From the IMG/VR virus record IMGVR_UViG_3300044646_001937, positions 62,001 to 126,000 of that record: DNA of 64,000 nucleotides; one strand, written 5' to 3'. Positions 2,908 through 59,830 of this stretch are shown piece by piece. The number at the start of each line of letters is the position of its first letter. Position 1 is the first letter of the stretch. The position numbers and the translations under genes are program-made. The notes under the pieces were generated by a model that did no database searches, had not been told where the DNA came from, and was given only the letters and a program-made list of their open reading frames with translations.

Positions 2908-2957
2908 TTTTCTAGATAGGAATTGAAAATCATAGACGTATAATATAGTATATAGTG

Positions 2958-4721: not shown

Positions 4722-4763
4722 TATATAATACTATAAAACTAACAAACAACCAGGAGTAACGAT

Positions 4764-7211: not shown

Positions 7212-7251
7212 TATTTGCTGTAAAAGATTTCTTTTATGACTAGAATATATT

Positions 7252-9165
7252 ATGGCAATTCTATTAAACGACAATTTAAAGATAGCGTTAGCTAAACCTG
7301 TAGATAGCAGATACGGTCCTTATGTAGACACTCAAACAGCCCTGAATTCGATACCTTCTTTTCAAAGGTATCCAGGGCTTGTTGTAGGTATTAGAGATAG
7401 CGGTGATGTTACAGAATACTGGTTCAAAGACGGCGTCATTGAGCTTGTTCCAAAGATCTCGGCTACATCAGCTGGGGATTGGCAGGTAATATCGACTAGC
7501 TCTAGTGTGGCAGACAATAGCTATGTAATTGCCGATTCTTCATCCGCAGGATTTACATTAACATTATCAGCTTCTCCTGTAAGCGGATCATATGTTTGGA
7601 TTCAGGATGCTAAAGGATCGTGGGAGGCTAATAATGTTATTGTAGACCCTAATGGTAATCAAATCGTAGGGTTAAGCGACTCGTTGTCTTTAAACGTGTC
7701 TAACTCTATCGTACTGCTTACATATGTAGGTGGAGATGTTGGTTGGGATGTTAAAAATGTTGCTGGTGATTTCTCTGACTATCTTACAGGAATAATCGGA
7801 GCTACAGGCGCAACTGGGGTAGGTATCTTGCCGTTGACCACTGCCGCATTAGGTTCTTTTGGAGGCAGCTCACAAATTCCAAGCCTTACTATTGATGAAT
7901 ATGGTAGAGTAGTGAGTGCTAGCAATAACAGTATTACTCCTCAGGGTATTGGAGCACTAGGTACTGCTGATATCATAGGTATAACAAAAGGAGGAACAGG
8001 AAGCACAGCAGCAGCTGCAGCGTTAACTGCTTTAGGCGCTCAAGCAGCTTTAACTAGTGCTGCTCCATTATCTATAGCACAAGGCGGAACTGGGGCTAGC
8101 ACTGAAGAAGCTTCAAAAATGGCTTTGGCTGGAGTTATCCCAATATCAATTAGACATAACAATGCTTTAACTCTCGCTACCGTAGGCACTTTAAATGGAG
8201 CTACATGGACGATCAATTCGAACATAGTGCAATACACGTCTTTTACGCAAGCAGCTTCAGCGGGAAATGCTCCCTTGGCTATTTATCAAGCTGTTTCTCA
8301 AGTAGGTATTGCAAATATGGTGATAATTGCTATAGATACAGAGAATAAAACTATCACACTTAACAATAACGCAACTGTATCTGGAACTGGAACTGTAACT
8401 GTTCAAAACTCTACATTAAACGAGATAACATTTACAGCCGGCACATCGCCAAATACTCTTGATGGTAGAGCTTTATCTATAGGTGAATCTGTTTTATTGA
8501 CGGCTCAAGCATGTGCAGTGCATCAAGGGCCTTGGCTGGTTAAAACGCTAGGCGCATCTGGTGTTTGCGGAGTTTTTGAAAGACCTTCTTGGTTTGCTGG
8601 CGGGCAGCTATTAAAAACAGCTATGATATTTGGTGCGCAATATGGATCTTCGAATGCAGGATTCACTATAACTATTGCGCCAAATGTTGGTTCAAATAAT
8701 TGTGTTATAGGTACAGGAAATCTTTCAGCCAACACACTCTCAAATAAATCAACTATTGTATCAGTTAACAACACTACGGCTTTTTCAGCTAGGCAGACTT
8801 TTGTTGCAAACTCATCAACCGTTAATCCTTACTCATTTCAAGCATCAACTACGCAATTATCTACTTTGCTCGCTCATGCTGTAGAGTGGGACAGTAATTT
8901 AATGTATATTACTCCTGGAGCTTTAAGTACAGCTAATCTTAGAAGAACAATTAATGCTGGTTATATTCCTGCATTAACTAGCGCAGATATTCTTACTCTG
9001 GGTGCAGCACAATCTACAATACAAGCCAACGCATTAACATCTACAATGCAAGGCGTGTTAGGTCAGACAATTCTAGATGCTGTAAACGATGCTTTATATG
9101 TCTGTACAGGTACAGGGGCAGCAGGTGCAGCTAAATGGAGGAAAGTTTCTTTATCTACTTTCTAA
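7252..9165 (+). CDS. tail fibre-like protein
   Basis: N-terminus paralogous to 4764 ORF (ILLNDNL...RYGP); ADSS.GFTLTL.ASP..G..VWIQD module resembling T4 gp34-type fibre repeats. Confidence 0.7.
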   Translation: MAILLNDNLKIALAKPVDSRYGPYVDTQTALNSIPSFQRYPGLVVGIRDSGDVTEYWFKDGVIELVPKISATSAGDWQVISTSSSVADNSYVIADSSSAGFTLTLSASPVSGSYVWIQDAKGSWEANNVIVDPNGNQIVGLSDSLSLNVSNSIVLLTYVGGDVGWDVKNVAGDFSDYLTGIIGATGATGVGILPLTTAALGSFGGSSQIPSLTIDEYGRVVSASNNSITPQGIGALGTADIIGITKGGTGSTAAAAALTALGAQAALTSAAPLSIAQGGTGASTEEASKMALAGVIPISIRHNNALTLATVGTLNGATWTINSNIVQYTSFTQAASAGNAPLAIYQAVSQVGIANMVIIAIDTENKTITLNNNATVSGTGTVTVQNSTLNEITFTAGTSPNTLDGRALSIGESVLLTAQACAVHQGPWLVKTLGASGVCGVFERPSWFAGGQLLKTAMIFGAQYGSSNAGFTITIAPNVGSNNCVIGTGNLSANTLSNKSTIVSVNNTTAFSARQTFVANSSTVNPYSFQASTTQLSTLLAHAVEWDSNLMYITPGALSTANLRRTINAGYIPALTSADILTLGAAQSTIQANALTSTMQGVLGQTILDAVNDALYVCTGTGAAGAAKWRKVSLSTF

Positions 9166-9187
9166 TATAGTTTAATATTACAGCCAT

Positions 9188-10942
9188 ATGATTTCTCTAC
9201 AAACACTTAGACCCAGATTTCAAGGACCAGATGGAGCAACAGGCTCTGTAGGAGCAACTGGTTTAATGGGTGCAACTGGGCTGGGGGCAACGGGAGCTAC
9301 TGGAAATATTGGAAGTACTGGAGCAACTGGAATTGGCGCCACAGGAGCAACTGGTGTTGGTACCGAAGGTTCGACTGGCGCTACTGGATTAACTGGAGCC
9401 ACTGGACCTGCCGGCGTTTCTGACAGATATCAAACCACATCTAATTCTAGTCTTAATGTAGATAACGGTACAAAAAACCTTGTTGTAGCGACAGACTTAA
9501 ACTATACACCTAATCAGAGTGTAATTATTTCATACATTACAGATCCTACTACACACATGGAGGGAACTGTAGTCAATTACACTTCTGGTTCAGGAGCGTT
9601 GGTGGTCAATGTAACTAGCCATAATGGCTCTGGTTCTAATCTATCTGGCTGGACTGTCAATTTAGCAGGTTCTGTTGGTTCTGTTGGCGCTACTGGATTA
9701 ACTGGCGCAACCGGTGCGGCTGGCGAAGGTAACCTTGTGTTTGGTAGTACAGGTTCTACAAGAACACTTACAGGGTTTAAAGAAAACGGCGTCACATCTA
9801 CGGTTAGAACTGCAGCGATTACCAATGGTAATCTAATACTAACTCTTGCAGCATTTACTCCTACAGTTACAGCCACATCTAATGGAACTTTAAATTGGGA
9901 TGTTGCTGCATCCTCGTTTACAGCTACTGCGGATAATCCATCTGATATTCTAGATCAATACATCAGCAGCGTTCTTTCTTTAACTCAATTAACTGGTAGC
10001 GTGTCTACAGATTTAGGTGGTTACACTGCTGGCAGCTACACAGCTAATCCAGCAGGCGGTGTGGATTGGTCTAGAACATTCACCACAAACAATTCTACTT
10101 CGTATATTAGGTCTACCTCAACTACAGCCAGCGGAGGAAGCGCTAGCGCTAGAGTTTCGTTTAACTATTACAATGGTACTGGTACAGACACATGGACTAG
10201 TACGGCTGATTTTTCTGTAAATTGGAATACTGTAAGTCATTCAATTAGTCTAGCTGCGCTTACTGGGAAAACATTCCTGCAAACATACGCTAGTTCGGCC
10301 TACACAGCATCAACAACAGGCTTAACAAATTCAGCTAATAGAGCGTTTACTGTTAGCGGAACTAACGGAACTCCGAGTAGTCTCACTGGTAGCGGTACAT
10401 TGAATTTCACTACACCGATACATAAAACTAACGCTAGCTCTACAGCAACATATGTAACACTAAGTACATTGTGCACAAGACCCGCAGCTGTTACAGGAAC
10501 TTCATATCAAGTTACACTAGGACCTACGAACAGCGCTAGCGTCAACACTGCCGCTTCTTTTACATATCCTTCTTTCTGGCTTTTCACTGCCAGTACGGGA
10601 ATAATTCCTACAAGAGCTGATATTGTGGAGGACAGCAGCCCTGGCGGATTTGAGTCTAGTGTTACTCAGCTGGGAGATCAGGTTAAAGTTTTAAGTACGC
10701 AACCTATTGTCAATTTAGATAGCAATCCTGTGGCATTCTGGTTTGCTGTAAGAGCTTCTGCAAGTCAGCCCACTTCGTTTAAAACAGGCGCTAGCGCAGG
10801 ACTACTTAGTGATGTGAGTGTGGTGGATGGCGGTACTGTAGCTCTACAACCTGATTCTGTTCCTTCAGGCTATTCTGCAGAGAACTATAGACTTTGGGGC
10901 ATCACCCTACAACCTGGAACCACTTACGTGAGTATATCATAA
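9188..10942 (+). CDS. collagen-containing fibre protein with Ser/Thr-rich beta domain
   Basis: GATG tracts; shared SDRYQTTS...WTVNLAG module. Confidence 0.7.
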
Positions 10943-12570
10943 TGAGTACCGATTATAATGGATTAACAAGAAACGTGTGGCCCGGTACATGGAGTACAGG
11001 GACTAACTCGCCTATTGCGCTAGACACAGAACTAAGAGGAACATTACAGAGCATAAGTGGAGATTCTGGAGATAGACTTACAGACATTCCTGGTGCAAGG
11101 CTTACAGAAGGTATGCTTGTCTATGTAAAGACAGGTTATACCGCAGGGCTTACAACAAGATCAGGTGATAGCTATTATAAATATAATCTTTTAAACGGAG
11201 AATCTAGAAGTGCTGTTACGGGCGCAATGCCTAACGCAGAAGCCAACTGGACAGAGGCATCTTTTGGTGGAGGCGGTGGAACCAACGGTGCCACAGGCGC
11301 TACTGGAGCACAGGGTGCTACAGGAACTGGAGATCGTTATAGAACAACATCCTTTACACCGCTGACAATTGGTGATGGTCTATATGGTACGCAAACCATG
11401 CAGGTAGAGACTGGCTTAGCTTTTACAGCAAATCAGTCAATTATAGTTAATGATGCGCTAAATACAATTAACTACATGGTGGGTAAAGTCATTAGCTATA
11501 ATGCTGTTGACGGTACTCTTGTAATGATGGTTGAAAGTCATTACGGTAGCGGGGCAACAGGAAGCTGGGATGTTAACCTAGCTGGTGTGCAACCTGGAGA
11601 AGGAGGTGCAACAGGAGCTACAGGAGCTCCTGGCATTGGTGGAGTTGAATGGCAGACAGTTAGCACAAATTATACATTAACTAGTAACTCTTGGATATCT
11701 GCAGATACAACTGCGGGAGGCATAACTTTAACACTACCAGCGTCTCCATCATCAGGAGATGCTATATGGATTCAGGACATATCTAACTCATGGGAAATTC
11801 ATCCTGTTGTATTAACTACCAACAACACTGTAGATATTTACGGATATAATGAAGACCTTTCATTAAACGTTGAAGACAGTCTGGTGTTACTTACATATGT
11901 AGGTGGAAATGTTGGTTGGGATGTTAAAAATATTTCAGGTGACTATAATCTTAGCTATTTAATTGGAGCAACAGGTGCTACTGGAAGCAGAGGACCTACA
12001 GGCTTGACTGGAGTAGCAGGATCTACAGGGGCGACAGGAGTTGTAGGGACAACTGGAGCAACAGGATCTGTAGGTCCAACAGGCTTAACGGGAATTACGG
12101 GACCTACTGGTGCTACTGGAGTTGGATTTGAATCTGGCGCTCTACCTAATCCTGTTATTGAAAATTTAGATTTAACTAGTTTAAATTTTCATGTATCTTC
12201 TTTTAATAATTCATTATATCTTAAAAACAACCAAATTTATTTCGTAAATGTAAATGGCGGCGATCCTACTGCTGACGTTAATTTAAATATTGTTGGAGAC
12301 GCCAACACTTCTTTAAACAGTCTTTTGTCTGTAGGTAAAACTATAACTTTTAGCGTAATGGTTGCGAATAATTCAAACGCAGGAATTTCAACTATTCGCA
12401 ATATTCTTGTAGATAATGGTGATAGTGGATTAAATGTTACAGTAAGATGGTTTAACACCACGTGGACAGGTGCAGCAGGTTTAGATGTGTACAGTTTTAC
12501 TGTATTAAAAATTGGTGAAAACCAGTTTGAGGTATTTGGAAGTATTCAAAATGCACAGGAAGTGGTATAG
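10942..12570 (+). CDS. modular collagen/fibre protein
   Basis: ATG overlaps upstream TAA (TAATG); contains the DRYRTTS module, the gp34-like module and GATG tracts. Confidence 0.7.
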
Positions 12571-34902: not shown

Positions 34903-35337
34903 TTGAAAGTTATGTTTGGAATTATTTGCAAAATTAACGGGAAAGAAGCTTTGTATAACTGCGCGCCGTTCAGGTCTCACGATGTCGCATCGTGCGAGGC
35001 GGACATCTTAAATGAGATGTACCCAGAGAATAAGTATAGTGTAATTGATTTATGGGCGGCGACGACAAATAAACGTAGCTCGGGGGGGAAAAAATCCCTC
35101 CACGCACAAATCCACAGACTAATGAAGGCTAGCGGAGTAGTTTATTACCTTGCCAAATTTGGTGAGGGCATAGACTACAACTCCCACGGTCAGTGGGGCA
35201 TGATGTTCGCGCACGAGATTCACAAGAAGCTCGTTGACGCGGAACATGTGGTGACTGGTTACACACGAAACCATGCATTCCACAGGCTCGGCAGAGGCTG
35301 CGCCAATCGTGGAGCAGAAATCTACTGGAGTTGGTAG
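34903..35337 (+). CDS. hypothetical protein
   Basis: 144 aa; GGAGG 10 nt before TTG (ATG 34912 alternative); TGGTATAGT promoter at 34781. Confidence 0.6.
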   Translation: MKVMFGIICKINGKEALYNCAPFRSHDVASCEADILNEMYPENKYSVIDLWAATTNKRSSGGKKSLHAQIHRLMKASGVVYYLAKFGEGIDYNSHGQWGMMFAHEIHKKLVDAEHVVTGYTRNHAFHRLGRGCANRGAEIYWSW

Positions 35338-35340
35338 TTC

Positions 35341-35383
35341 ATGCGCACATCAGGGTTCAATTCCTTGATGTGCGCATTTTTTT
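35341..35383 (+). terminator. intrinsic terminator
   Basis: 15-bp stem ATGCGCACATCAGGG/CCTTGATGTGCGCAT, loop TTCAATT, T7. Confidence 0.85.
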
Positions 35384-35393
35384 AGCTATCAGA

Positions 35394-35429
35394 CAAAAAG
35401 AAAGCTGGCCTGGATTTCTCCAGACCAGC
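35394..35429 (-). terminator. intrinsic terminator
   Basis: GCTGGTCTGGA-GAAA-TCCAGGCCAGC then TTTCTTTTT on the minus strand. Confidence 0.8.
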
Positions 35430-35456
35430 CGTCTCGTTCGCAACGACTAACTAATA

Positions 35457-35879
35457 CTAAACAACTGCTTTGATATCTGGATTCATAATCTCCAGCTGTA
35501 GAATAGGAAAGCCCAACTCTGGATTATAGTCAAGCTTGGCTCTCACTACATTCTTAATTTCTACCATTTTACCAAGACTTGTCGATACAAATACTTTGGT
35601 ATCTTCGGTATTTTTTCCAGGAACAAATGTAACATTTCTCTGAGAGGCAGCTACGTTTTCTTCTTCACTCTTGGCTATCCAATCCTCATACAACGCTGCA
35701 GCGCAAGATTGCTTATTTTTAGCTTCAGCAGCTTTATGATCTTCATATGTAAACTTCTGAATATCTTCCAGCCATTTCTTCATTTCTTCGATAGTCATAT
35801 TGAATCCTGCAATCTTAAGTTCAATGTCATCGTTGATCTGCTCTTTCGGGGCTTTGGTAGTTTTGATTGTTTTGCTCAT
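35457..35879 (-). CDS. hypothetical protein
   Basis: ATG 35879 (MSKTIK) preferred. Confidence 0.6.
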   Translation of the reverse strand: MSKTIKTTKAPKEQINDDIELKIAGFNMTIEEMKKWLEDIQKFTYEDHKAAEAKNKQSCAAALYEDWIAKSEEENVAASQRNVTFVPGKNTEDTKVFVSTSLGKMVEIKNVVRAKLDYNPELGFPILQLEIMNPDIKAVV

Positions 35880-35886
35880 ATGTTTG

Positions 35887-36459
35887 TTAGGGTTGTTTTT
35901 GATAAGTGCCAGTTTCACAATAGTCGTAAAACCTTGCAAGCAAGTGCAAAAAGTCACTCAGTCTGTTAATATATTTAATCAGCAAATCTCTGCAAGCATA
36001 TTCTTGATTAGCTTTTTCTGTATCTACTAGAAACACTAAAGCTCGTTCAGCTCTTCTGCAAATTTTAGAACTTAGATCTGCTCTAGCTCCTTTTTCTGAG
36101 TTGCCATATAACACCCAGCCTTGCTGATCCAGTTCTTTCATATCCTGCAGAACATCTACTTTCTGGTCAAGTAAATCCATGTCTGCTTCTTTTACATAGT
36201 CATACTTCTCAACATATTCTTTTCTTTTTTCAGGTTCAGAAACAAGCTCACCCATGAAAAGGGTCAGTGAGTGCTGTATAGTTTCCAGATATGCTCTGTA
36301 GCTGTCTTGTTTATCTAGTGAAGCTTTTAGAAAACCTATGGCTGCATTCAACTCGTCCACATCTCCAACCAGTTGAATTCTATAATCTTGTTTACTTACT
36401 CGTTTACCAAACAACAAGCCAGTTGTTCCTTTGTCTCCTGATTTTGTAGCAATACGCAT
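35887..36459 (-). CDS. pduO: PduO-type ATP:cob(I)alamin adenosyltransferase
   Basis: TKSGDKGTT.L..G.RVSK, GDVDELNAAIG, CRRAER, YINRLSD. Confidence 0.9.
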   Translation of the reverse strand: MRIATKSGDKGTTGLLFGKRVSKQDYRIQLVGDVDELNAAIGFLKASLDKQDSYRAYLETIQHSLTLFMGELVSEPEKRKEYVEKYDYVKEADMDLLDQKVDVLQDMKELDQQGWVLYGNSEKGARADLSSKICRRAERALVFLVDTEKANQEYACRDLLIKYINRLSDFLHLLARFYDYCETGTYQKQP

Positions 36460-36503
36460 TCCTATATATGATCTTCTGCAGTCAGAATAATCAAGAGGTT
36501 TTA

Positions 36504-36512
36504 TGGTATAAT
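36504..36512 (+). promoter_or_regulatory. extended -10 promoter
   Basis: TGGTATAAT. Confidence 0.55.
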
Positions 36513-36553
36513 ATTATGAAGGCTAGTTAGCCTTTTTATTAAACAATACAACA

Positions 36554-36892
36554 ATGAAAATATCGCATGACAAAATCGCAATGGTCGTATGTAAGGAGTA
36601 CAAGACGTTCCAGGATGTGTTTGACACCGAGGACTACGAAGACGTTATATCCTATCATGAAGCTGCAGATCTCCCTATTGAGGAGATGACAAACATGATG
36701 AATTATTTGAAGAGGCATATTGAAGTTGCCTCTAAACCAGACGAGTTTGATCAACTTGTGGTAATGCTGGATGATTACTATTATCCTAAAATGGCACCAC
36801 TGGTGAACCTCACACCAGAAATGGGTCCAGTGGCCTTTGGTCGTTGGAACAGCAAGAAGAAAAAATTCGTCAAAACAGGATACCTACAATGA
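36554..36892 (+). CDS. hypothetical acidic protein
   Basis: 112 aa ORF. Confidence 0.65.
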   Translation: MKISHDKIAMVVCKEYKTFQDVFDTEDYEDVISYHEAADLPIEEMTNMMNYLKRHIEVASKPDEFDQLVVMLDDYYYPKMAPLVNLTPEMGPVAFGRWNSKKKKFVKTGYLQ

Positions 36893-37113
36893 CAACATCT
36901 GAAGGGGCCGATGGGCCAACGTTTGTGTTGCCCACTAACACAAATCCTCCAAGAGAGGAGCCTGAGGAGTGGGTTGTCAATATAACTGAATCTCCATGGA
37001 GATTGATCGGTTTTAATGACAGTGGCATTTGGAACAGTAGAGGGCAGCAAAGACACAGTTCAACCAACGAGGAATTACAACAGCAGCTCGCCATGTTGAA
37101 TAGAGTTCGCTAA
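36889..37113 (+). CDS. small hypothetical protein
   Basis: ATGA overlap start at 36889; followed by a terminator. Confidence 0.5.
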   Translation: MTTSEGADGPTFVLPTNTNPPREEPEEWVVNITESPWRLIGFNDSGIWNSRGQQRHSSTNEELQQQLAMLNRVR

Positions 37114-37125
37114 CCCTTGAAATAG

Positions 37126-37164
37126 AAAAAGCCTGGACCCCAAAAGGAATCCAGGCTTTTTTTT
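37126..37164. terminator. bidirectional intrinsic terminator between convergent genes
   Basis: A5-GCCTGGA...TCCAGGC-T8. Confidence 0.8.
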
Positions 37165-37176
37165 AGCTGTCAGAGA

Positions 37177-39027
37177 CTAGTCGATAGTACAAGCTCCGCC
37201 AGCACATGCAATTTCACCTTTGAAATCAGTGTTGTCTTTTCTTTCTTTGATGTCTTCGAAGCTGAAGTTTTCTGCTATTTGAGAAAACGCTTTATCCAGG
37301 ATTTCAAATACTTCCGGATGCGGGGGCTGGCTATAAGGCAAGTACTTATAATCTCCACCGTCATAAGGAATAAGACTAATCCCATAATACGAGTCCTTGT
37401 TTTCGATCATCCACTTCTTGATCGCCTCTTTTTCGTGTTCATGATAGTTGATTGTAAGGCTGATGTTGTGAGTGTTAACACCTTCGACGTGACCAGGCAC
37501 AATCCAATTATCGTACAATTTTTTAACACGCTCAAGACATTGTACGGCAGTTTCTTGAGATCTGAGTAGTGTGGTGTCATAGAGTTTTACAGGTACCTGC
37601 ATGATCATGTCGTTGCTGTTGAAAGGATCATCAACAACAAAGGCAGGAAATCGCTTGGCCAAGGCCTTAGCAAGAGCGCTGAACTTATCCATGCGCACTC
37701 GCCTAATATATCTGATCTCATGTCCCGCATGTACGCCCGCTGTGGTTCCCAGCCAGCTGCTGCTTGTGCCGCTAGGTTTGGTTGTAGTGATTCTCCTAGC
37801 TGGCTTGATGCCGAGCTTAGCTGCCCACTCTCTATTAATTTCGACAGAAAGTTTTGCTCCGTCTTGCAGGTTTTCATTAGTGAGAATTTGCTGATTTTCA
37901 GCCTGACCAGTGATCGATACACCGAGAAGTGACTCGTCCTCTGCATTTTCTTTCCATCCTGGGTGAACATATTTAAAGTCTGTGTATGATGCTTGTAGGG
38001 TTCCTATGATTGTAGCAGCTTCTACTGCTTGAAGCCACTCTTCTCTAGAAAAGCATTTGGCTGCGTTGATTTCTGTCAGGTTACATACTCCTCGCGACTT
38101 CAATGCAATTTCATGGCAAGGGTTAAAGCCGAGGTCATCGCTGTCACCAGTAAGCGACAACCCCGGCTCAGCTTGCCCTCCGTCGAAGCATGCCTGTATG
38201 ATATAAGCGGCTTTGCTGGCAAACTCAGGATCGTCTTTTCTTAAGACTGCACTGTTGTTTGCTCTTGCTAGCTCTGGGTATTTCTCCCACCAGTTGCCTG
38301 CCTTGCAGTGAACAAGCTCTTGTTCATCTGCATCAAAAAGACTAATCAATGCACCTCTACGTACTCCACCTACAACAACGCAATCTGCTACAAGACAGCA
38401 GATTCTATGACATTCAAAAGGAGTAAGCTTGCGTCCTTCAGATTTCCTAAGAATTGCTCTTACGTTTGCATGCATCTTGATCAATGCCTTAGGTCCGCTA
38501 GATGTTCCTCCTGTACTCAACGGACTGCCCATAGGGCGAATTTGAGTGTAGTCAAATTGAAGGTCAGGATTGGTAAACAACGCCACTAAAGAATCACACC
38601 AACCTTCTGCAGAATCTTCGATGATATATGGAGCCACAACAAAGCCTTCAGGTACAAGGTCTAGCTGTGATACATGGCGCTTCTTTACACTGAAGCCTAC
38701 CCCCGCGCCGCTCATACTCATGTAAAAAAGATCAGCGAAGTCTTTTACAGAAGTAATGTTTAGGAAGCTGCAGTTGTACATGCGGTTGTGTCTACGCTCA
38801 ATAGCCTCACCTGCAAACTGAAAGCTCCTCATGCTAGGAACTACCCTGCCAGCAAAAACCTGTTCATATGCCTTTGAGATTTCTTTCTCAAGATTTGGAA
38901 ACTTCTTAACATGCATATCTAGGTTACGCTTGATAGTTTCCTCTTTGGTTTCTCTTCTCTGTTCTTCAGGAAGATACTTTGCATAGGTGCGATAGTGAAC
39001 GATTTTTGATAGAAATTCTTTACTCAT
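37177..39027 (-). CDS. nrdJ: class II adenosylcobalamin-dependent ribonucleotide reductase, monomeric RTPR type
   Basis: RMYNC, GGVRRGA, NPCHEI, CNLTEIN, KPSGT, C-terminal CAGGAC; no small subunit nearby. Confidence 0.9.
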   Translation of the reverse strand: MSKEFLSKIVHYRTYAKYLPEEQRRETKEETIKRNLDMHVKKFPNLEKEISKAYEQVFAGRVVPSMRSFQFAGEAIERRHNRMYNCSFLNITSVKDFADLFYMSMSGAGVGFSVKKRHVSQLDLVPEGFVVAPYIIEDSAEGWCDSLVALFTNPDLQFDYTQIRPMGSPLSTGGTSSGPKALIKMHANVRAILRKSEGRKLTPFECHRICCLVADCVVVGGVRRGALISLFDADEQELVHCKAGNWWEKYPELARANNSAVLRKDDPEFASKAAYIIQACFDGGQAEPGLSLTGDSDDLGFNPCHEIALKSRGVCNLTEINAAKCFSREEWLQAVEAATIIGTLQASYTDFKYVHPGWKENAEDESLLGVSITGQAENQQILTNENLQDGAKLSVEINREWAAKLGIKPARRITTTKPSGTSSSWLGTTAGVHAGHEIRYIRRVRMDKFSALAKALAKRFPAFVVDDPFNSNDMIMQVPVKLYDTTLLRSQETAVQCLERVKKLYDNWIVPGHVEGVNTHNISLTINYHEHEKEAIKKWMIENKDSYYGISLIPYDGGDYKYLPYSQPPHPEVFEILDKAFSQIAENFSFEDIKERKDNTDFKGEIACAGGACTID

Positions 39028-39138
39028 ATTGTTTTTTATTTGTTTGTATAGGTTTACCTAACCTAACATTTATAGTACCAAAATAACTGTTTAGCCTACA
39101 GAAAATTAGTTTTCGATACGATATATTTATATCTTGCC

Positions 39139-39585
39139 TTATCTCTGTCCAAGTATATAGGGCTGACTTAACGACAATTGCCTGATGACTATTCCCATAT
39201 CCAGGGCTCTAGTCAATGAAGAATGATCTCTATGGTAGAGTTGGTCGTAGATTACTTCTTTCACACCATGTTCAGCTATGAGATCTAGGCATTTGCTGCA
39301 CGGAAGCATGGTCACATAAAGATAGTGAATGCTATCTTTTTCAGCATATTTCAAGCAGTTGAATTCTGCATGTATGACAAAAGGTCTGCGTGCATCTCTA
39401 TCAGACCAATCTAGCTCTACTCCAGGCAGAGCACCATTATACCCTGTGGCTATGGTACTTCTGTCTTTTCTAAATGCTGCAGCTCCTACGCTGATGTAAG
39501 GGTCTGGAGATCTTTGACTTGCTGCATAAGCGAGCAGCATTCCGTATTCATCCCAATTTGGACGGGGCTTTTCTGAATTATTCAT
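39139..39585 (-). CDS. dCMP deaminase (ComEB/Dctd family)
   Basis: TGYNG, HAEFN, PCSKC zinc motifs. Confidence 0.9.
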   Translation of the reverse strand: MNNSEKPRPNWDEYGMLLAYAASQRSPDPYISVGAAAFRKDRSTIATGYNGALPGVELDWSDRDARRPFVIHAEFNCLKYAEKDSIHYLYVTMLPCSKCLDLIAEHGVKEVIYDQLYHRDHSSLTRALDMGIVIRQLSLSQPYILGQR

Positions 39586-39591
39586 GAGTGC

Positions 39592-39780
39592 TTACGCTAG
39601 CACTTCGTAAGCAGCCCTGCAAAGATTTTTTAGCAGATGTTCCATTTCCTCGTCATCTACTCTATCAAAGTTATGAAACGTTGGACGCTCGCCATCGAAA
39701 TCAACTTTAAGCACACAGGAGCCATCATATACGATGGTTATCTGGTCTGTGTCTGTATTATAATCAAATTCGAATGTCAT
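39592..39780 (-). CDS. small acidic hypothetical protein
   Basis: 62 aa ORF in operon with dCMP deaminase. Confidence 0.6.
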   Translation of the reverse strand: MTFEFDYNTDTDQITIVYDGSCVLKVDFDGERPTFHNFDRVDDEEMEHLLKNLCRAAYEVLA

Positions 39781-39824: not shown

Positions 39825-40517
39825 ATGCCTAGTTCTAAACAAGAAAAAATAACTAAACTTAAGGAATATTTTAGGAACATGCGTTTGGACGCATCTGTGA
39901 TGGGAAGGACTCTAGGAAGCTCATCTTCATATGTTTCGCCTCAAATAATGCTAGATACCACCAAGAAGCTGCTGGATGTGTTTGGTAGAAAGGTTGAACC
40001 TGATGATCGTGATAACGTCATCTTTTCCAAGTTTATGGGGCCTGAAGATCATATTAGAGAACATATTGAGCATGATGCAGGTAAGATTCAATTTAAAGCA
40101 AAGTCTAAGCTAAGACAAAAAAGAAACCTGTCATGGTTGCATGCAGGCTTCTTTTCTCCTCAGGTAAAATCTGTTTTTGTAGGTAACTCATTAAGTCAAA
40201 ATATTGAGGGTGTAAATCCGATGGAGCAGTATATGCTTGCACATAAAGTTACCAAAATGGGTGAGGGCGGTATCGGTTCTACTGAGGCTATTCCAGAATC
40301 TTCTAGAGAGGTAAATGAGTCTCAGTTTGGTTTACTTGACCCTATTCAAACAGTAGAGGCAACGACCATCGGGGTAGTAAATTTTTTCGTACATAATACC
40401 AGAAAAGGTACTGATGGAAAACTTTACAGACAGGTAATTGATAATGCTACTGGCAAGCCTGTATGGATTGATCATCATGAGTTTCTTTCTTCGGTTATAG
40501 ATATTCCTGAGCATTAG
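39825..40517 (+). CDS. RNA polymerase beta subunit, middle fragment (rifampicin region, fork loop)
   Basis: [19 protein letters not shown] ~ [42 protein letters not shown] ~ [23 protein letters not shown]. Confidence 0.85.
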   Translation: [230 protein letters not shown]

Positions 40518-56824: not shown

Positions 56825-59800
56825 ATGCCGAATAAGAGCCACAAGTATGTTTTGGACAATGGGAAGTTGAAGAAAGTTCTTGGAACCACCAAAGCCAAGT
56901 ACAGCATTCCAGACCCATCATCCTTTTTCAGCCCTGTTACAAATCTGATTCCAGGTATCAGTTCTGTGTCTGGTGCTCGCGTATTGATTGGAGACAAGTC
57001 ATCCCTCCAGGCAATGACCCTGGTAAACAGAGAGGCTCCGCTGATACAGTCGGCCCCTAAGAACGTAAAAGGCGTAACCACCGAGAGCTTCAGCAAGCAG
57101 TTCGGTAAGCTTGTAACCGTAAACGCTAAAGCTGACGGAACAGTTACCAAGATAGACGAAGACCATATTGTGATCAAAGACAAGCTGAGTAAGCTTCATG
57201 AACACGACCTCTATAACAACTATATTGTAGGAAGAGAAAGCTACCTACACCACACTCCTGTGGTTAAGGTTGGAGACAAGGTCAAAGCTGGAGACCTCCT
57301 AGCCACATCGAACTATTCTGATGGTAAGGGTATGCTTGCTCTTGGTATGAACCTCAAGACAGCTATCATGCCCTACAGATCTCTTAACTTTGAAGATGCT
57401 CTGGTTATTTCCGAGACAGCAGCAAAGAAACTAGAGGGAGAGCAGCTGATTCCTGTACGCATGGAAATTGCTAGAGGGATGATAGTAGACAAAGACCAGT
57501 ACGTCTCGATGTTCCCTAATAAATTCTATAACGAGCAGTTGTCTAATATTGCTAGCAATGGTGTGGTCAAAAAAGGAACAGTATTGAACCATGGAGATCC
57601 AGTGATTCTAGCCTGCCAGCCTAAGTCGCTTAAATCTCTAGATATTCAGTTGGGTAATTTGTCTAAAGCTGTAAAGAATGCGTTCTCAGACGTAGGAACC
57701 ATCTGGGAGTATGAATATCCTGGTGAAGTCACAGACGTATCGGTCACATCAAAGCTAATAGCTGTTACGGTTAAGACAAAAAGACCTATGAGCTATGGAG
57801 ACAAACTAAACATGCCGTTCGGAGCAAAAGGCGTTGTACACATTGCTCCTGATACACAGATGCCCCAGGGAGAAGACGGCAAACCTGTAGATGTATTGCT
57901 CAACACTATGAGTATTACCTCTCGCGTTGCTCCAGGATTGGTAAATACTATCGGGCTAGGTAAGCTGGCAGAAAAGAAAGGAAAGGCCCTGAACATGTCG
58001 GGCTTTACCGAAGGTTCCGCAGTCCAAAAGGTGGCCGATGTTTTGGCTAAGAACAATATTAAAGATACCGAGAAACTGTATGATCCTATTTCAGGCAAAC
58101 ATATTGATGTGATGACAGGTCCGCTATACTTCAACAGATTACATCATATTGCCGAAGATAAAATATCTACAAGATCGGCAGCAACCACCTACGACATTAA
58201 CATGCAGCCCTCTAAAGCAGGATCGCATGAAAAAGCTAAACGTCTAGGTAATCTGGCTACCACCGTAGCACTATCAAACGACGCTAAAGCCGTACTTAGA
58301 GATGTTGCCACAGTCAGAGCCACAAAGAATGACGAGTTTTGGACAGCCTTGAAACTAGGGCATGCTCCACCTCCACCAAAAACCCCATTCATATTTGAGA
58401 AGTTCCTAAGCCACCTCAAAGGCTCTGGAGTGAATGTGGTTCAAGACGGTTCTAAGTTTCATATCATGCCTCAAACAGATAAAGATGTTGTAGCACTTTC
58501 ACAAGGAGCAATTACAGAACCTCTAGGCTACAAACTTAAAAAAGATGCACTCATGCATGAAGAAGGAGGACTTTTTGATCCTACACTCACAGGCATTCAT
58601 GGCAACAACTACAATCATGTGGAGTTAAATCATAAAATCCCAAACCCGATGGCTGAAGAGCATCTCAGAAAATTACTGAAGATGACTAAGGCAGCATATG
58701 ATGACGCTATCGCATCAGGAGAATTAGAGAATAAGCTTAAGGCTATGAATCTGGACGATAAGATCACAGAGCTAAAGCAATTGGTAGCGTCCAAGAGAAA
58801 ATCAGGCAGAGATGACGCTATTAAAGCTCTAAGCTTCCTGACAATGCTTAAAGAAAAAAACCTAAAGCCTGACGACATGATGCTCTCAAAGCTGGCGGTA
58901 ATTCCTGCCCAGTATAGACCTGTAATGGTTCAGGGAAATCAGACTCTGACCGCAGACGTGAACGAGCTCTATAAGGACGTGATGCTGGTTAACAAGTCAT
59001 ATGGAGAAGCCAAAGATTCTCCAGACATAGACAAGGAACATTTAACTGAAGCAAAAAAGCAAATCTATGCAGGAGTCAAAGCTGTCTATGGTTTGGGTGA
59101 ACCTATTAAGCAAAAAAGTGTAGAAAAGAACTACAAAGGCTTATTAGCATCGGCTTTAGGTTTGCAAGGCGGATCAGCCAAAGAATCTATGTTTCAGGCA
59201 AAGGTGGTAAACAAGCCTATTGATCTTGTAGGCAGAGCAGTGTTGCTTCCTGACTCTAAATTAGACTTGAATCAGGCTAGTATTCCTCAGCAGGTAGCAT
59301 GGAGTATCTATTCTCCTTTTGTTATTCGCAGATTGGTAAGACAAGGCATACCAGCCACCAAAGCCAGAGAATATTTAGACAACAAGCATCCTCTGGCACT
59401 GTCAGCACTACAGGACGAGATGACAGATCGCCCAGGCATTGTTACCAGAGATCCGCAACTTTCAAAGTACAACTTTCAGGGTATGTACCTAAAAATGAAT
59501 CCTGATCCAAAGGACTTTTCGATTAAATTAAATCCTTTGGTGTTTAAGGGGTATGGCGGAGACAGTGATGGTGACCAGCTTAACGTACAGCTACCAGCTA
59601 GTGAAGACGCAAAAGAGGAAGTTAAAGAGAAATTGCTTCCTGAAAAGAATCTTATCTATCACAGAACATTTAGTCCAATATTCACACCATCCAACGAAGC
59701 TGCTACCGGTTTATTCGCTGCAAGTTTTGAAGATAATAAGAATACTCCTAAGAAATACAGCTCTCCCCAGGACGTGGTTAAAGATTTTTTAGCAGGAAAG

Positions 59801-59830
59801 CTTGATGTTGGTGACAGAGTAGAGTTATAA
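56825..59830 (+). CDS. fusion of RNAP beta C-terminal part and beta' N-terminal part (catalytic subunit)
   Basis: beta motifs NFEDA, GDKL....G.KGV, RLHHIAEDK; beta' motifs NHVEL, VIPAQYRP, DLVGRAV, TRDPQL, GGDSDGDQ. Confidence 0.93.
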   Translation: MPNKSHKYVLDNGKLKKVLGTTKAKYSIPDPSSFFSPVTNLIPGISSVSGARVLIGDKSSLQAMTLVNREAPLIQSAPKNVKGVTTESFSKQFGKLVTVNAKADGTVTKIDEDHIVIKDKLSKLHEHDLYNNYIVGRESYLHHTPVVKVGDKVKAGDLLATSNYSDGKGMLALGMNLKTAIMPYRSLNFEDALVISETAAKKLEGEQLIPVRMEIARGMIVDKDQYVSMFPNKFYNEQLSNIASNGVVKKGTVLNHGDPVILACQPKSLKSLDIQLGNLSKAVKNAFSDVGTIWEYEYPGEVTDVSVTSKLIAVTVKTKRPMSYGDKLNMPFGAKGVVHIAPDTQMPQGEDGKPVDVLLNTMSITSRVAPGLVNTIGLGKLAEKKGKALNMSGFTEGSAVQKVADVLAKNNIKDTEKLYDPISGKHIDVMTGPLYFNRLHHIAEDKISTRSAATTYDINMQPSKAGSHEKAKRLGNLATTVALSNDAKAVLRDVATVRATKNDEFWTALKLGHAPPPPKTPFIFEKFLSHLKGSGVNVVQDGSKFHIMPQTDKDVVALSQGAITEPLGYKLKKDALMHEEGGLFDPTLTGIHGNNYNHVELNHKIPNPMAEEHLRKLLKMTKAAYDDAIASGELENKLKAMNLDDKITELKQLVASKRKSGRDDAIKALSFLTMLKEKNLKPDDMMLSKLAVIPAQYRPVMVQGNQTLTADVNELYKDVMLVNKSYGEAKDSPDIDKEHLTEAKKQIYAGVKAVYGLGEPIKQKSVEKNYKGLLASALGLQGGSAKESMFQAKVVNKPIDLVGRAVLLPDSKLDLNQASIPQQVAWSIYSPFVIRRLVRQGIPATKAREYLDNKHPLALSALQDEMTDRPGIVTRDPQLSKYNFQGMYLKMNPDPKDFSIKLNPLVFKGYGGDSDGDQLNVQLPASEDAKEEVKEKLLPEKNLIYHRTFSPIFTPSNEAATGLFAASFEDNKNTPKKYSSPQDVVKDFLAGKLDVGDRVEL

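What the first reader, a model, noticed from the sequence alone, without database searches (positions are those of the whole stretch)
35887..39585. B12-dependent dNTP module: PduO adenosyltransferase beside class II RNR and dCMP deaminase
Seen: pduO, nrdJ and dCMP deaminase lie within 3.7 kb on the same strand. Known: NrdJ requires adenosylcobalamin, which PduO makes from cob(I)alamin and ATP. Inference: the phage activates the cofactor for its own oxygen-independent RNR, redirecting the host B12 pool.
Basis: partly seen in the sequence, partly recalled or inferred. Interest (0 to 1): 0.6.

Follow-up and report, generated by a model that had tools for sequence, protein, structure and literature searches.

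The report
Phage B12-activating enzyme beside B12-dependent reductase
A 204-kb freshwater jumbo phage carries, next to its only ribonucleotide reductase (a vitamin-B12-dependent type), its own enzyme for converting B12 into the active coenzyme; the same gene pairing recurs in several unrelated virus lineages and was not found in cultured phages or in the papers searched.

Summary
On the minus strand lie a PduO-type ATP:corrinoid adenosyltransferase (35887-36459), a monomeric RTPR-like class II ribonucleotide reductase (RNR, 37177-39027) and a dCMP deaminase (39139-39585). The record is a complete 204-kb virus genome with terminal repeats.

The RNR keeps all five catalytic and redox cysteines. 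It is the only RNR in the genome; no NrdB, NrdD or other B12-binding domain was found.

PduO has the right fold (TM 0.77-0.88), intact ATP and catalytic motifs, and dN/dS of about 0.1. Its corrin pocket is remodelled, however.

The pairing is not chance. A class II RNR lies within 6 kb in 44 of 84 viral PduO loci (12 of 27 clusters), against 2 of 80 nearest cellular loci. Within this PduO clade, three different class II RNR types sit upstream.

PduO is absent from genuine cultured phages and from PHROGs, and no paper describing it was found.

Caveats: the three genes are not one operon here. A terminator and two opposite-strand ORFs separate RNR from pduO, which instead forms a unit with a conserved 140-aa ORF. 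A near-identical phage carries a clean pduO deletion, so the gene is accessory. Activity and the claimed redirection of the host B12 pool are untested.

The parts
39139..39585 (-). dCMP deaminase, 148 aa (zinc motifs HAE and PCSKC)
   Evidence: PF00383 1e-17; phrog_174 2.3e-34; best PDB matches are dCMP deaminases 2W4L, 2HVV, 4P9C, 1VQ2; syntenic upstream of the RNR in relatives at 61-70% identity.
39592..39780 (-). Conserved 62-aa ORF directly upstream of the deaminase; function unknown
   Evidence: No Pfam or NCBIfam hit; found at the same position in family members at 53-77% identity.
37177..39027 (-). Class II (AdoCbl-dependent) ribonucleotide reductase, monomeric RTPR-like, 616 aa
   Evidence: TIGR02505 5.6e-64; phrog_367 9.5e-117; 1L1L 2.7e-35 with NPC(H)E, CNL, NC and C-terminal CxGGAC aligned; those residues are invariant across 7 diverse viral homologues; 81-96% identical across the phage family, dN/dS 0.02-0.03; four metatranscriptome contigs lie on it.
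37126..37161 (.). Bidirectional intrinsic terminator (16-bp perfect stem flanked by an A-run and a T-run) just after the RNR stop codon
   Evidence: Sequence read; fold -27.2 kcal/mol, z=-4.78, 0 of 200 shuffles as good.
36844..37113 (+). Small opposite-strand ORF (89 aa) between RNR and pduO; function unknown
   Evidence: Best-conserved frame in this gap (73% over 85 aa in L014/L015, 125 bits), better than the minus-strand frames; no Pfam hit.
36554..36892 (+). Small opposite-strand ORF (112 aa), divergent from pduO; function unknown
   Evidence: Protein-like translation, whereas the minus-strand ORFs 36539-36754 and 36781-37056 translate to Cys-rich, antisense-looking strings; no Pfam hit.
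36513..36542 (-). Sigma-70-like promoter match (TTAATA-18-CATAAT) in the 95-bp divergent intergenic region upstream of pduO
   Evidence: Consensus scan. Weak evidence only: the number of such matches in the region equals the shuffle expectation.
35887..36459 (-). PduO-type ATP:corrinoid adenosyltransferase, 190 aa, member of a virus-specific clade
   Evidence: PF01923 4.9e-41, TIGR00636 above cut-off; 30 PDB PduO/MMAB hits; AF2 model pLDDT 90.7, TM 0.77-0.88 to 2ZHY, 6D5X, 3CI1; conserved motifs; dN/dS about 0.1; monophyletic viral clade, SH-aLRT 97.
35457..35879 (-). Conserved 140-aa ORF starting 7 nt after the pduO stop; candidate PduO partner, function unknown
   Evidence: Sequence; the same position directly after pduO in L003, L009-L016, L018-L021 and L023; conserved C-terminal beta domain, pLDDT 84-90, no PDB fold match.
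35403..35430 (-). Intrinsic terminator closing the pduO plus 140-aa ORF unit
   Evidence: 12-bp stem with 7 GC pairs followed by a T-run.

Best explanation
This freshwater jumbo phage makes deoxynucleotides with a single, oxygen-independent, adenosylcobalamin-dependent (class II, monomeric RTPR-like) ribonucleotide reductase. It also carries its own PduO-type adenosyltransferase. That enzyme would bind cob(II)alamin, or another cobamide, taken from the host, allow its reduction to Co(I) by host reductants, and use ATP to attach the 5'-deoxyadenosyl ligand. The product is the coenzyme form the RNR needs. The enzyme would also re-adenosylate cofactor that has decayed to cob(II)alamin or hydroxocobalamin.

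On this reading the phage RNR does not depend on whether, or how well, the host adenosylates B12. That would matter in B12-auxotrophic hosts that mainly need methylcobalamin.

PduO would then be to class II RNR what NrdG is to class III and NrdI to class Ib: a dedicated cofactor-activation accessory. It is accessory rather than essential. The dCMP deaminase is a separate, ordinary member of the same nucleotide-metabolism neighbourhood.

Shown: gene identities, motifs, fold, selection, synteny, and enrichment of the pairing in viruses. Inferred: enzyme activity, use of host reductants, the cofactor form used, and the benefit to the phage.
For: - RNR identity. RTPR model 5.6e-64 and PDB 1L1L 2.7e-35, with Cys119, Asn406/Cys408/Glu410, Cys419 and Cys731/Cys736 equivalents all present and invariant in diverse viral homologues.
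- No alternative RNR or B12 enzyme. No NrdB, NrdD, second RNR or B12-binding domain in the complete genome.
- PduO identity. Above the equivalog-domain cut-off; N-terminal TKxGDxGxT, D35 and CRRAER invariant; confident model matching PduO/MMAB structures; dN/dS 0.09-0.11.
- Family synteny. 19 of 21 loci of the window's PduO clade have a class II RNR upstream on the same strand; the other two are cut by contig ends.
- Three RNR types. The clade is paired with a 616-aa type, a 662-aa type at 28% identity (L006) and an 860-aa NrdJ+TSCPD type (L024).
- Independent lineages. Separate viral PduO clades (group B L025-L049, L051/L053, giant-virus MAGs L054/L067/L069) also sit next to class II RNRs.
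- Enrichment. 44 of 84 viral loci against 2 of 80 nearest cellular loci, p=4e-14; 12 of 27 clusters.
- Host dependence. No phage thioredoxin, glutaredoxin or flavodoxin, consistent with host reductants. A Thermus-virus NrdJm was shown to be B12-dependent and to use host thioredoxin (PMC6459318).
Against: - No enzyme assay exists.
- The corrin pocket is non-canonical in the whole clade. The Phe112 wedge is Trp, the LPGG proline is Tyr, and the Arg equivalent to human MMAB Arg186 is Ser or Ala with a Lys one position later. Arg186 contacts ATP and AdoCbl and is the commonest disease site (PMC9262797).
- pduO is not co-transcribed with the RNR in this phage.
- L171, a near-identical phage, has pduO cleanly deleted. 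L179 lacks it in 74 kb of a record estimated 38% complete.
- 1044 cultured-phage records carry this RNR type without any genuine PduO.
- The metatranscriptome contigs cover only the RNR.
- The complex prediction gave no answer.
Confidence: 0.72

Rival explanations
1. The PduO homologue is not mainly a catalyst. It acts as a cobalamin escort or chaperone, perhaps together with the conserved downstream 140-aa protein. It would bind the corrinoid and load it directly onto the RNR, or retrieve damaged cob(II)alamin from it, as human MMAB does for methylmalonyl-CoA mutase.
For: The clade-specific remodelling of the corrin pocket (W115, Y118, Ser/Lys in place of the Arg186 equivalent) is conserved across the clade. 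A tightly coupled, clade-conserved downstream ORF exists. PduO evolves about ten times faster than the RNR (57% against 96% identity for window versus L013), as expected for a protein adapting to partners.
Against: The ATP-binding and catalytic motifs are fully conserved, which argues for retained catalysis. The same PduO clade sits beside three unrelated class II RNR types, which argues against a specific protein-protein fit. The complex prediction gave no answer and counts neither way.
Confidence: 0.15
2. PduO serves host manipulation rather than the phage RNR. By raising AdoCbl it would flip host AdoCbl riboswitches or feed host AdoCbl enzymes, and its position near the RNR is only inherited synteny.
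For: pduO has its own promoter-like site and terminator and is separated from the RNR by a terminator. Roughly half of the viral PduO loci have no RNR within 6 kb.
Against: The adjacency arose repeatedly with different RNR types and different PduO clades. In some family members the two genes are only 6-52 bp apart. Large records without adjacency still encode an RNR elsewhere: G004 has two strong RTPR-type matches (8e-67), while G002 has only a weak match of unknown class (5.3e-4). No cobalamin riboswitch or other B12 gene is in the window or genome.
Confidence: 0.06
3. The PduO gene is a decaying or neutral passenger acquired from a Verrucomicrobiota-like host, with no role in infection.
For: A natural clean deletion exists in a near-identical phage. 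No genuine PduO was found in cultured phages.
Against: dN/dS is about 0.1 and there are 28 invariant positions, including all catalytic motifs, across a clade only 47-63% identical. Twelve of 14 family contigs retain it. The viral clade is monophyletic and old: at most 42% identity to any of 185,579 species genomes.
Confidence: 0.05

Closest known systems
PduO-type ATP:cob(I)alamin adenosyltransferases (L. reuteri PduO, human MMAB, B. thailandensis 2ZHY)
   Same: Same family by HMM (above cut-off) and the same five-helix-bundle fold (TM 0.77-0.88). Identical N-terminal ATP motif, the D35 equivalent and the CRRAER motif.
   Different: Virus-encoded. At most 42% identical to any cellular homologue found. 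Phe112 is Trp, a change shared with a Verrucomicrobiota-like bacterial subfamily. In addition, specific to the clade, the LPGG Pro is Tyr and the Arg186(human) equivalent is Ser/Ala with Lys one residue later. No PHROG family matches it.
Monomeric class II RNR (RTPR/NrdJm) of L. leichmannii and of phages, e.g. the Thermus-virus NrdJm (PMC6459318) and marine RTPR virioplankton (PMC10547690)
   Same: Same catalytic residues and C-terminal redox pair. A common phage gene: 1044 INPHARED records. Relies on host thioredoxin, as shown for the Thermus-virus enzyme.
   Different: Shorter (616 against 739 aa) and below the RTPR equivalog cut-off (216 against 340 bits). The published phage cases have no adenosyltransferase. 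PMC10547690 states that such viruses must infect a host that makes or modifies B12, and it never mentions an adenosyltransferase.
Phage-encoded RNR accessory factors: NrdG activase with class III NrdD, NrdI/NrdH with class Ib, T4 thioredoxin NrdC (from general knowledge)
   Same: The same logic: the virus carries the factor that installs or regenerates the radical-generating cofactor of its own RNR.
   Different: Different chemistry (Co-C bond formation on a host-derived corrinoid). The factor is optional. As far as my searches reach, it has not been described for class II RNRs in viruses.
Patescibacteria (CPR) cluster nrdR-nrdJ-pduO-DUF4430-DUF6580 (L116; also L136)
   Same: The only cellular loci among the 80 nearest PduO loci with nrdJ next to pduO, in the same order and on the same strand. 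Both are genome-reduced entities that cannot make B12.
   Different: A cellular chromosome (ftsA and ftsZ adjacent). The RNR has an ATP-cone and an NrdR regulator, and the neighbouring DUF4430 and DUF6580 genes have no counterpart in the phage.

Membership tests
PduO-type corrinoid adenosyltransferase (PF01923 / TIGR00636) | Profile match above the curated cut-off | tested here: met
   PF01923 141.1 bits (cut-off 24); TIGR00636 120.8 bits (cut-off 108.45).
PduO-type corrinoid adenosyltransferase (PF01923 / TIGR00636) | Helical-bundle PduO fold | tested here: met
   AF2 model pLDDT 90.7; Foldseek top 30 hits are all PduO/MMAB structures, TM 0.77-0.88, prob 1.00.
PduO-type corrinoid adenosyltransferase (PF01923 / TIGR00636) | N-terminal ATP-binding motif T-K-x-G-D-x-G-x-T, Asp35, and the C-R-R-A-E-R motif (human R190, R191, E193, R194) | tested here: met
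   T5, K6, G8, D9, G11, T13, D35, E36, C134, R135, R136, E138 and R139 are invariant or nearly so in 25 sequences. Roles taken from PMC9262797.
PduO-type corrinoid adenosyltransferase (PF01923 / TIGR00636) | Aromatic wedge Phe112 (L. reuteri numbering) in the F-I-L-P-G-G motif, which displaces the lower ligand to give four-coordinate cob(II)alamin | tested here: inconclusive
   The window has W115-V-L-Y-G-N. Trp also occurs in the sister bacterial subfamily (W-A-T-P-G), but Tyr in place of Pro is specific to the clade. F112A and F112H impair the enzyme (PMC6257451); I found no data on Trp.
PduO-type corrinoid adenosyltransferase (PF01923 / TIGR00636) | Arg equivalent to human MMAB Arg186 (three residues before the Cys of CRRAER), which contacts ATP and AdoCbl | tested here: not met
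   Ser131 in the window and Ser/Ala throughout the clade, with an invariant Lys at the next position. Arg in all 83 other viral and bacterial sequences compared.
PduO-type corrinoid adenosyltransferase (PF01923 / TIGR00636) | ATP:cob(I)alamin adenosyltransferase activity | not testable with these tools
   Needs an enzyme assay or complementation.
Class II (AdoCbl-dependent) RNR, monomeric RTPR/NrdJm type | Catalytic residues: thiyl-radical Cys with Asn/Glu (N-P-C-x-E), the redox Cys pair, and the C-terminal CxxxxC | tested here: met
   N302-P-C304-H-E306, C86, C315, C608 and C613 align to RTPR N406/C408/E410, C119, C419 and C731/C736. They are invariant in 7 diverse homologues.
Class II (AdoCbl-dependent) RNR, monomeric RTPR/NrdJm type | No radical-generating partner of another class (NrdB small subunit; NrdD glycyl-radical enzyme) | tested here: met
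   PF00268 and PF13597 are absent from the complete 204-kb genome.
Class II (AdoCbl-dependent) RNR, monomeric RTPR/NrdJm type | RTPR equivalog model (TIGR02505) above cut-off; B12-RNR insertion domain (PF21995) | tested here: not met
   TIGR02505 scores 216.5 bits against a cut-off of 340. PF21995 scores 18.1 against 27. The protein is a divergent, shorter relative. The phage family phrog_367 matches over its full length (392 bits).
Class II (AdoCbl-dependent) RNR, monomeric RTPR/NrdJm type | AdoCbl dependence, NTP substrate, monomeric state | not testable with these tools
   Shown biochemically for a Thermus-virus NrdJm (PMC6459318), not for this protein.
dCMP deaminase (zinc-dependent cytidine/deoxycytidylate deaminase fold) | PF00383 above cut-off with the H-A-E and P-C-x-x-C zinc-binding motifs | tested here: met
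   64.3 bits (cut-off 25); IHAEFN and PCSKC are present; best PDB hits are dCMP deaminases.
Single co-transcribed operon (the 'module' as one unit) | Contiguous same-strand genes without internal terminators | tested here: not met
   A strong bidirectional terminator lies at 37126-37161 after the RNR. Two opposite-strand ORFs occupy 36554-37113. pduO has its own intergenic region and terminator. In some relatives the RNR-pduO gap is only 6-52 bp.

The most novel reading that the evidence does not exclude
A virus-specific PduO subfamily with a remodelled corrin pocket, together with the conserved small protein encoded 7 nt downstream, forms a dedicated maturation and repair system for class II RNR. 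This would be the missing 'activase' of that RNR class. It would let phages, and possibly giant viruses, run a B12-dependent RNR in hosts that only import B12 and never adenosylate it. It might also show specificity for a non-cobalamin cobamide. Presence or absence of pduO, as in the natural deletion variant, would then track host B12 physiology.
Probability: 0.3. Interest if true: 0.75.

Novelty: new variant of a known kind. Interest (0 to 1): 0.62.

Why it matters
Class II RNRs are among the commonest replication genes in environmental phages. Their B12 requirement is used to infer host range and virus-host-B12 ecology. Current discussion assumes the host must deliver ready coenzyme (PMC10547690).

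A virus-encoded last activation step changes that assumption. It gives class II RNR a dedicated accessory, as classes Ib and III already have. It adds cofactor tailoring to the list of viral auxiliary functions. It also provides a compact two- or three-gene system (NrdJ, PduO, the 140-aa ORF) that can be reconstituted in vitro.

The natural deletion variant and the recurrent, independent origins make the hypothesis directly testable.

Tried and rejected
- DNA search of the locus against 50,697 phage records found no match.
- PHROGs has no family for PduO.
- The 15 tblastn PduO hits in the 'phages' collection include no demonstrated phage PduO. One group is Acinetobacter 'phage' MD-2021a, which is bacterial chromosome (btuB, trpB, baeSR). 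The rest are short, unannotated or UNVERIFIED contigs. The two I checked have no RNR nearby.
- Minus-strand ORFs 36539-36754 and 36781-37056 were rejected as genes. Their translations look antisense, and the plus-strand frames are better conserved.
- Complex prediction on RNR plus PduO (1:1, no alignment) returned 'no answer', score 0.00. It is not evidence either way. PduO is a trimer, and the full trimer plus RNR exceeded the size limit.
- The 140-aa ORF gave nothing in Pfam or NCBIfam (tested as the longer 166-aa frame) and no usable hit in the ESM Atlas. The large protein collection returned only 8 homologues. Foldseek against PDB found nothing below E=0.2.
- Rfam at gathering thresholds found no cobalamin riboswitch or any other family in the window. 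No tRNAs were found.
- Searches of the genome for thyA, thyX, thioredoxin, glutaredoxin, flavodoxin, the B12-binding domain, NrdB and NrdD were all negative.
- Seven literature searches found no paper on a phage adenosyltransferase paired with NrdJ. The library is not complete.
- The metatranscriptome run gave only four read-length contigs, all on the RNR. That is too thin to judge pduO expression.

Full report
**Observation**

The window is bases 62001-126000 of a complete 204,454-bp virus record with direct terminal repeats. It carries collagen-like tail-fibre genes and phage multisubunit RNA-polymerase-like genes. Its nearest cultured relatives are only about 30% identical in that polymerase.

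- PduO-type adenosyltransferase, 35887-36459, 190 aa. PF01923 E=4.9e-41; TIGR00636 120.8 bits, above its 108.45 cut-off.
- Class II RNR, 37177-39027, 616 aa. TIGR02505 E=5.6e-64; phrog_367 E=9.5e-117 over its full length.
- dCMP deaminase, 39139-39585, 148 aa. PF00383 E=1e-17; HAE and PCxxC motifs present.

The coordinates in the finding are exact.

**Is the RNR really B12-dependent?**

Its only PDB relative is the L. leichmannii AdoCbl-dependent triphosphate reductase 1L1L (E=2.7e-35, aligned over three segments). The equivalents of Cys119, Asn406/Cys408/Glu410, Cys419 and the C-terminal Cys731/Cys736 are all present. They are invariant in seven diverse viral homologues.

The complete genome has no NrdB small subunit, no NrdD, no second RNR and no other B12-binding domain. 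The protein is shorter than RTPR and falls below the equivalog cut-off, so I call it an RTPR-like monomeric class II RNR rather than an RTPR orthologue.

A viral enzyme of this kind has been shown to be B12-dependent, NTP-specific and reduced by host thioredoxin (PMC6459318). In line with that, this phage has no thioredoxin, glutaredoxin or flavodoxin of its own.

**Is PduO intact?**

An AlphaFold model (pLDDT 90.7) matches PduO/MMAB structures at TM 0.77-0.88. The ATP motif (T5, K6, G8, D9, G11, T13), D35 and C134-R-R-A-E-R139 are invariant or nearly so across 25 homologues. dN/dS on unsaturated pairs is 0.09-0.11.

The corrin pocket, however, is non-canonical.

- The Phe112 wedge of F-I-L-P-G-G is Trp. 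The sister bacterial W-A-T-P-G subfamily, mostly Verrucomicrobiota, shares this change.
- The Pro of that motif is Tyr, which is specific to the clade.
- The Arg equivalent to human MMAB Arg186 is Ser or Ala, with an invariant Lys one residue later. All 83 other sequences compared have Arg at that position.

These points rest. Arg186 contacts ATP and AdoCbl (PMC9262797), and Phe112 substitutions can cripple the enzyme (PMC6257451). Membership in the family is therefore clear, but identical substrate handling is not.

**Comparative evidence**

The protein collection holds a distinct clade at 48-63% identity, on contigs up to 190 kb. Identity then drops to 43% or less for cellular homologues. 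The best of 185,579 species genomes reaches 42%. In a tree the clade is monophyletic (SH-aLRT 97) and sister to the bacterial Trp-type subfamily.

In 19 of 21 loci of this clade a class II RNR lies upstream on the same strand, with gaps of 6 to 2694 bp. The two exceptions are cut by contig ends. The clade is paired with three different class II RNR types:

- the 616-aa type found in the window;
- a 662-aa type, 28% identical (L006);
- an 860-aa NrdJ with a TSCPD domain (L024).

Separate viral PduO clades are also adjacent to class II RNRs:

- Group B (L025-L049), with a canonical FILPGG motif, in a phage with a 5'-3' exonuclease and a GH108 lysin.
- L051/L053.
- The giant-virus MAGs L054, L067 and L069.

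Overall, 44 of 84 viral loci have such an RNR within 6 kb, as do 12 of 27 clusters at 60% identity. Only 2 of 80 nearest cellular loci do (p=4e-14). Both cellular cases are Patescibacteria. One of them carries an nrdR-nrdJ-pduO-DUF4430-DUF6580 cluster beside ftsA and ftsZ.

Conversely, 1044 cultured-phage records encode this RNR type. The 15 PduO hits in that collection include no demonstrated phage PduO: one group is mislabelled bacterial DNA and the rest are short, unverified contigs. PHROGs has no matching family.

No paper in the held library describes a phage adenosyltransferase with NrdJ. A 2023 study of RTPR virioplankton states that such viruses must infect hosts that make or modify B12, and it never mentions an adenosyltransferase.

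**Local anatomy differs from a simple operon**

Directly after the RNR stop lies a 16-bp perfect hairpin flanked by an A-run and a T-run (37126-37161; -27.2 kcal/mol; z=-4.8). The 0.7-kb gap before pduO is best read as two small plus-strand ORFs, 36554-36892 and 36844-37113. The minus-strand ORFs there look like antisense artefacts.

pduO has its own 95-bp upstream region with a weak promoter match. Seven nucleotides after its stop begins a 140-aa ORF (35879-35457), and a terminator follows at 35430-35403. That ORF holds the same position in most clade members. It has a confidently predicted C-terminal beta domain but no recognisable relatives. The space between RNR and pduO is a variable insertion site across the family, holding for example a MYG1-like exonuclease in L005.

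**Dispensability**

Fourteen IMG/VR contigs carry this family's RNR (at least 81% identity) together with downstream DNA. Twelve of them have pduO.

L171 has an RNR 99% identical to the window's, and its flanks are 95-98% identical at the DNA level. It carries a clean in-frame 510-nt deletion between two AACTGGC repeats, leaving a 20-codon stub. L179 has no pduO in 74 kb of a record estimated 38% complete.

PduO also diverges far faster than the RNR: 57% against 96% identity for window versus L013.

**Ecology and expression**

The locus occurs in lake and freshwater metagenomes from about 15 studies. One metatranscriptome holds four read-length contigs on the RNR and none on pduO, which is too little to judge expression.

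**Interpretation**

The best-supported reading (confidence about 0.7) is that PduO supplies, and probably regenerates, the adenosyl form of a host-derived corrinoid for the phage's own class II RNR, using host reductants. This makes the RNR independent of host adenosylation capacity. It is an optional accessory.

- Shown: identities, motifs, fold, selection, synteny and enrichment.
- Inferred: catalysis, cofactor form, electron source and fitness benefit.

The main rival is a chaperone or loading role, possibly with the 140-aa protein. Host manipulation and neutral carriage are less likely. The complex prediction gave no answer and is not used as evidence. The dCMP deaminase is an ordinary syntenic neighbour. 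No thymidylate synthase was found in the genome.

**Verdict**

The enzymes are known kinds. The virus-specific PduO clade and its recurrent pairing with class II RNR appear undescribed, so I rate this a new variant of a known kind, with interest about 0.6.

Noticed in passing
L171:7570-7670 (IMGVR_UViG_3300044700_000788), against window 35908-36424: A near-identical phage (RNR 99% aa identity, flanks 95-98% nt identity) has a clean in-frame 510-nt deletion of pduO between two 7-nt AACTGGC repeats, leaving a 20-codon stub. This is a natural pduO knockout variant.
   Followed up: yes
window 35457-35879 (-): A 140-aa ORF starts 7 nt after the pduO stop and ends at a terminator. It holds this position across most of the PduO clade, and some homologues carry Cys-rich inserts. 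Its C-terminal beta domain is predicted confidently, but no fold or sequence relatives were found.
   Followed up: partly
window 36539-37113: The gap between RNR and pduO is best read as two plus-strand small ORFs (112 and 89 aa) of unknown function. The minus-strand ORFs listed there look like antisense artefacts. The same site holds different inserts in relatives, such as a MYG1-like exonuclease in L005. An Amidase_2 gene sits between the deaminase and the RNR in L003.
   Followed up: partly
whole genome G000; deaminase at window 39139-39585: The phage encodes a dCMP deaminase, but ThyA, ThyX, thioredoxin, glutaredoxin and flavodoxin are all undetectable in the complete 204-kb genome. The fate of the dUMP it makes (host thymidylate synthase, or a modified base pathway) is open.
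   Followed up: partly
L054:6001-11038, L067:6001-10710, L069:1825-6534, L043: Contigs labelled as giant-virus MAGs in IMG/VR also carry a PduO homologue beside very long (1389-1505 aa) class II-like RNR ORFs in convergent orientation. The long ORFs may contain inteins or fusions.
   Followed up: no
L116:2629-7919 (Patescibacteria MAG JBAZQK010000012.1): A cellular cluster nrdR - nrdJ (with ATP-cone) - pduO - DUF4430 - DUF6580 lies next to ftsA and ftsZ. L116 and L136 are the only 2 of the 80 nearest cellular PduO loci with an RNR nearby. It looks like a compact B12-salvage plus RNR unit in a genome-reduced bacterium.
   Followed up: partly
L002 (CAKLQH020000002.1, 'Acinetobacter phage MD-2021a'): This 254-kb record in the phage collection is bacterial chromosome (btuB, trpB/C, baeSR, fatty-acid desaturase). 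Several 'Listeria/Salmonella/Enterococcus phage' records with PduO hits are short unannotated contigs that I suspect are host DNA, though I did not check them. Counts from this collection need filtering.
   Followed up: partly
window 2955-12570 (+): A run of large ORFs (588, 815, 637, 584 and 558 aa), most with collagen-like repeat matches to many tail-fibre PHROGs; the 637-aa ORF matches only a PHROG of unknown function. This is an unusually long array of fibre genes.
   Followed up: no
window 39825-40517 (+) and 56825-59830 (+): Phage multisubunit RNA-polymerase beta/beta'-like genes. The 230-aa piece beside the nucleotide genes is 71-87% identical across the family. The 1001-aa protein is only about 30% identical to its nearest cultured relatives (Salmonella phage Arash, Vibrio phages D69/D181).
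   Followed up: partly
window 35341-35430: Two strong hairpin terminators face each other (plus strand 35341-35377, minus strand 35403-35430). They mark the convergence of the pduO unit with the plus-strand ORF 34903-35337.
   Followed up: no
L037:5624-5998 (group B phage loci L025-L049): In the second viral lineage with the RNR-PduO pairing, the constant gap of about 505 bp holds a 124-aa YspA/SLOG-family ORF. It is another possible nucleotide-related accessory.
   Followed up: no
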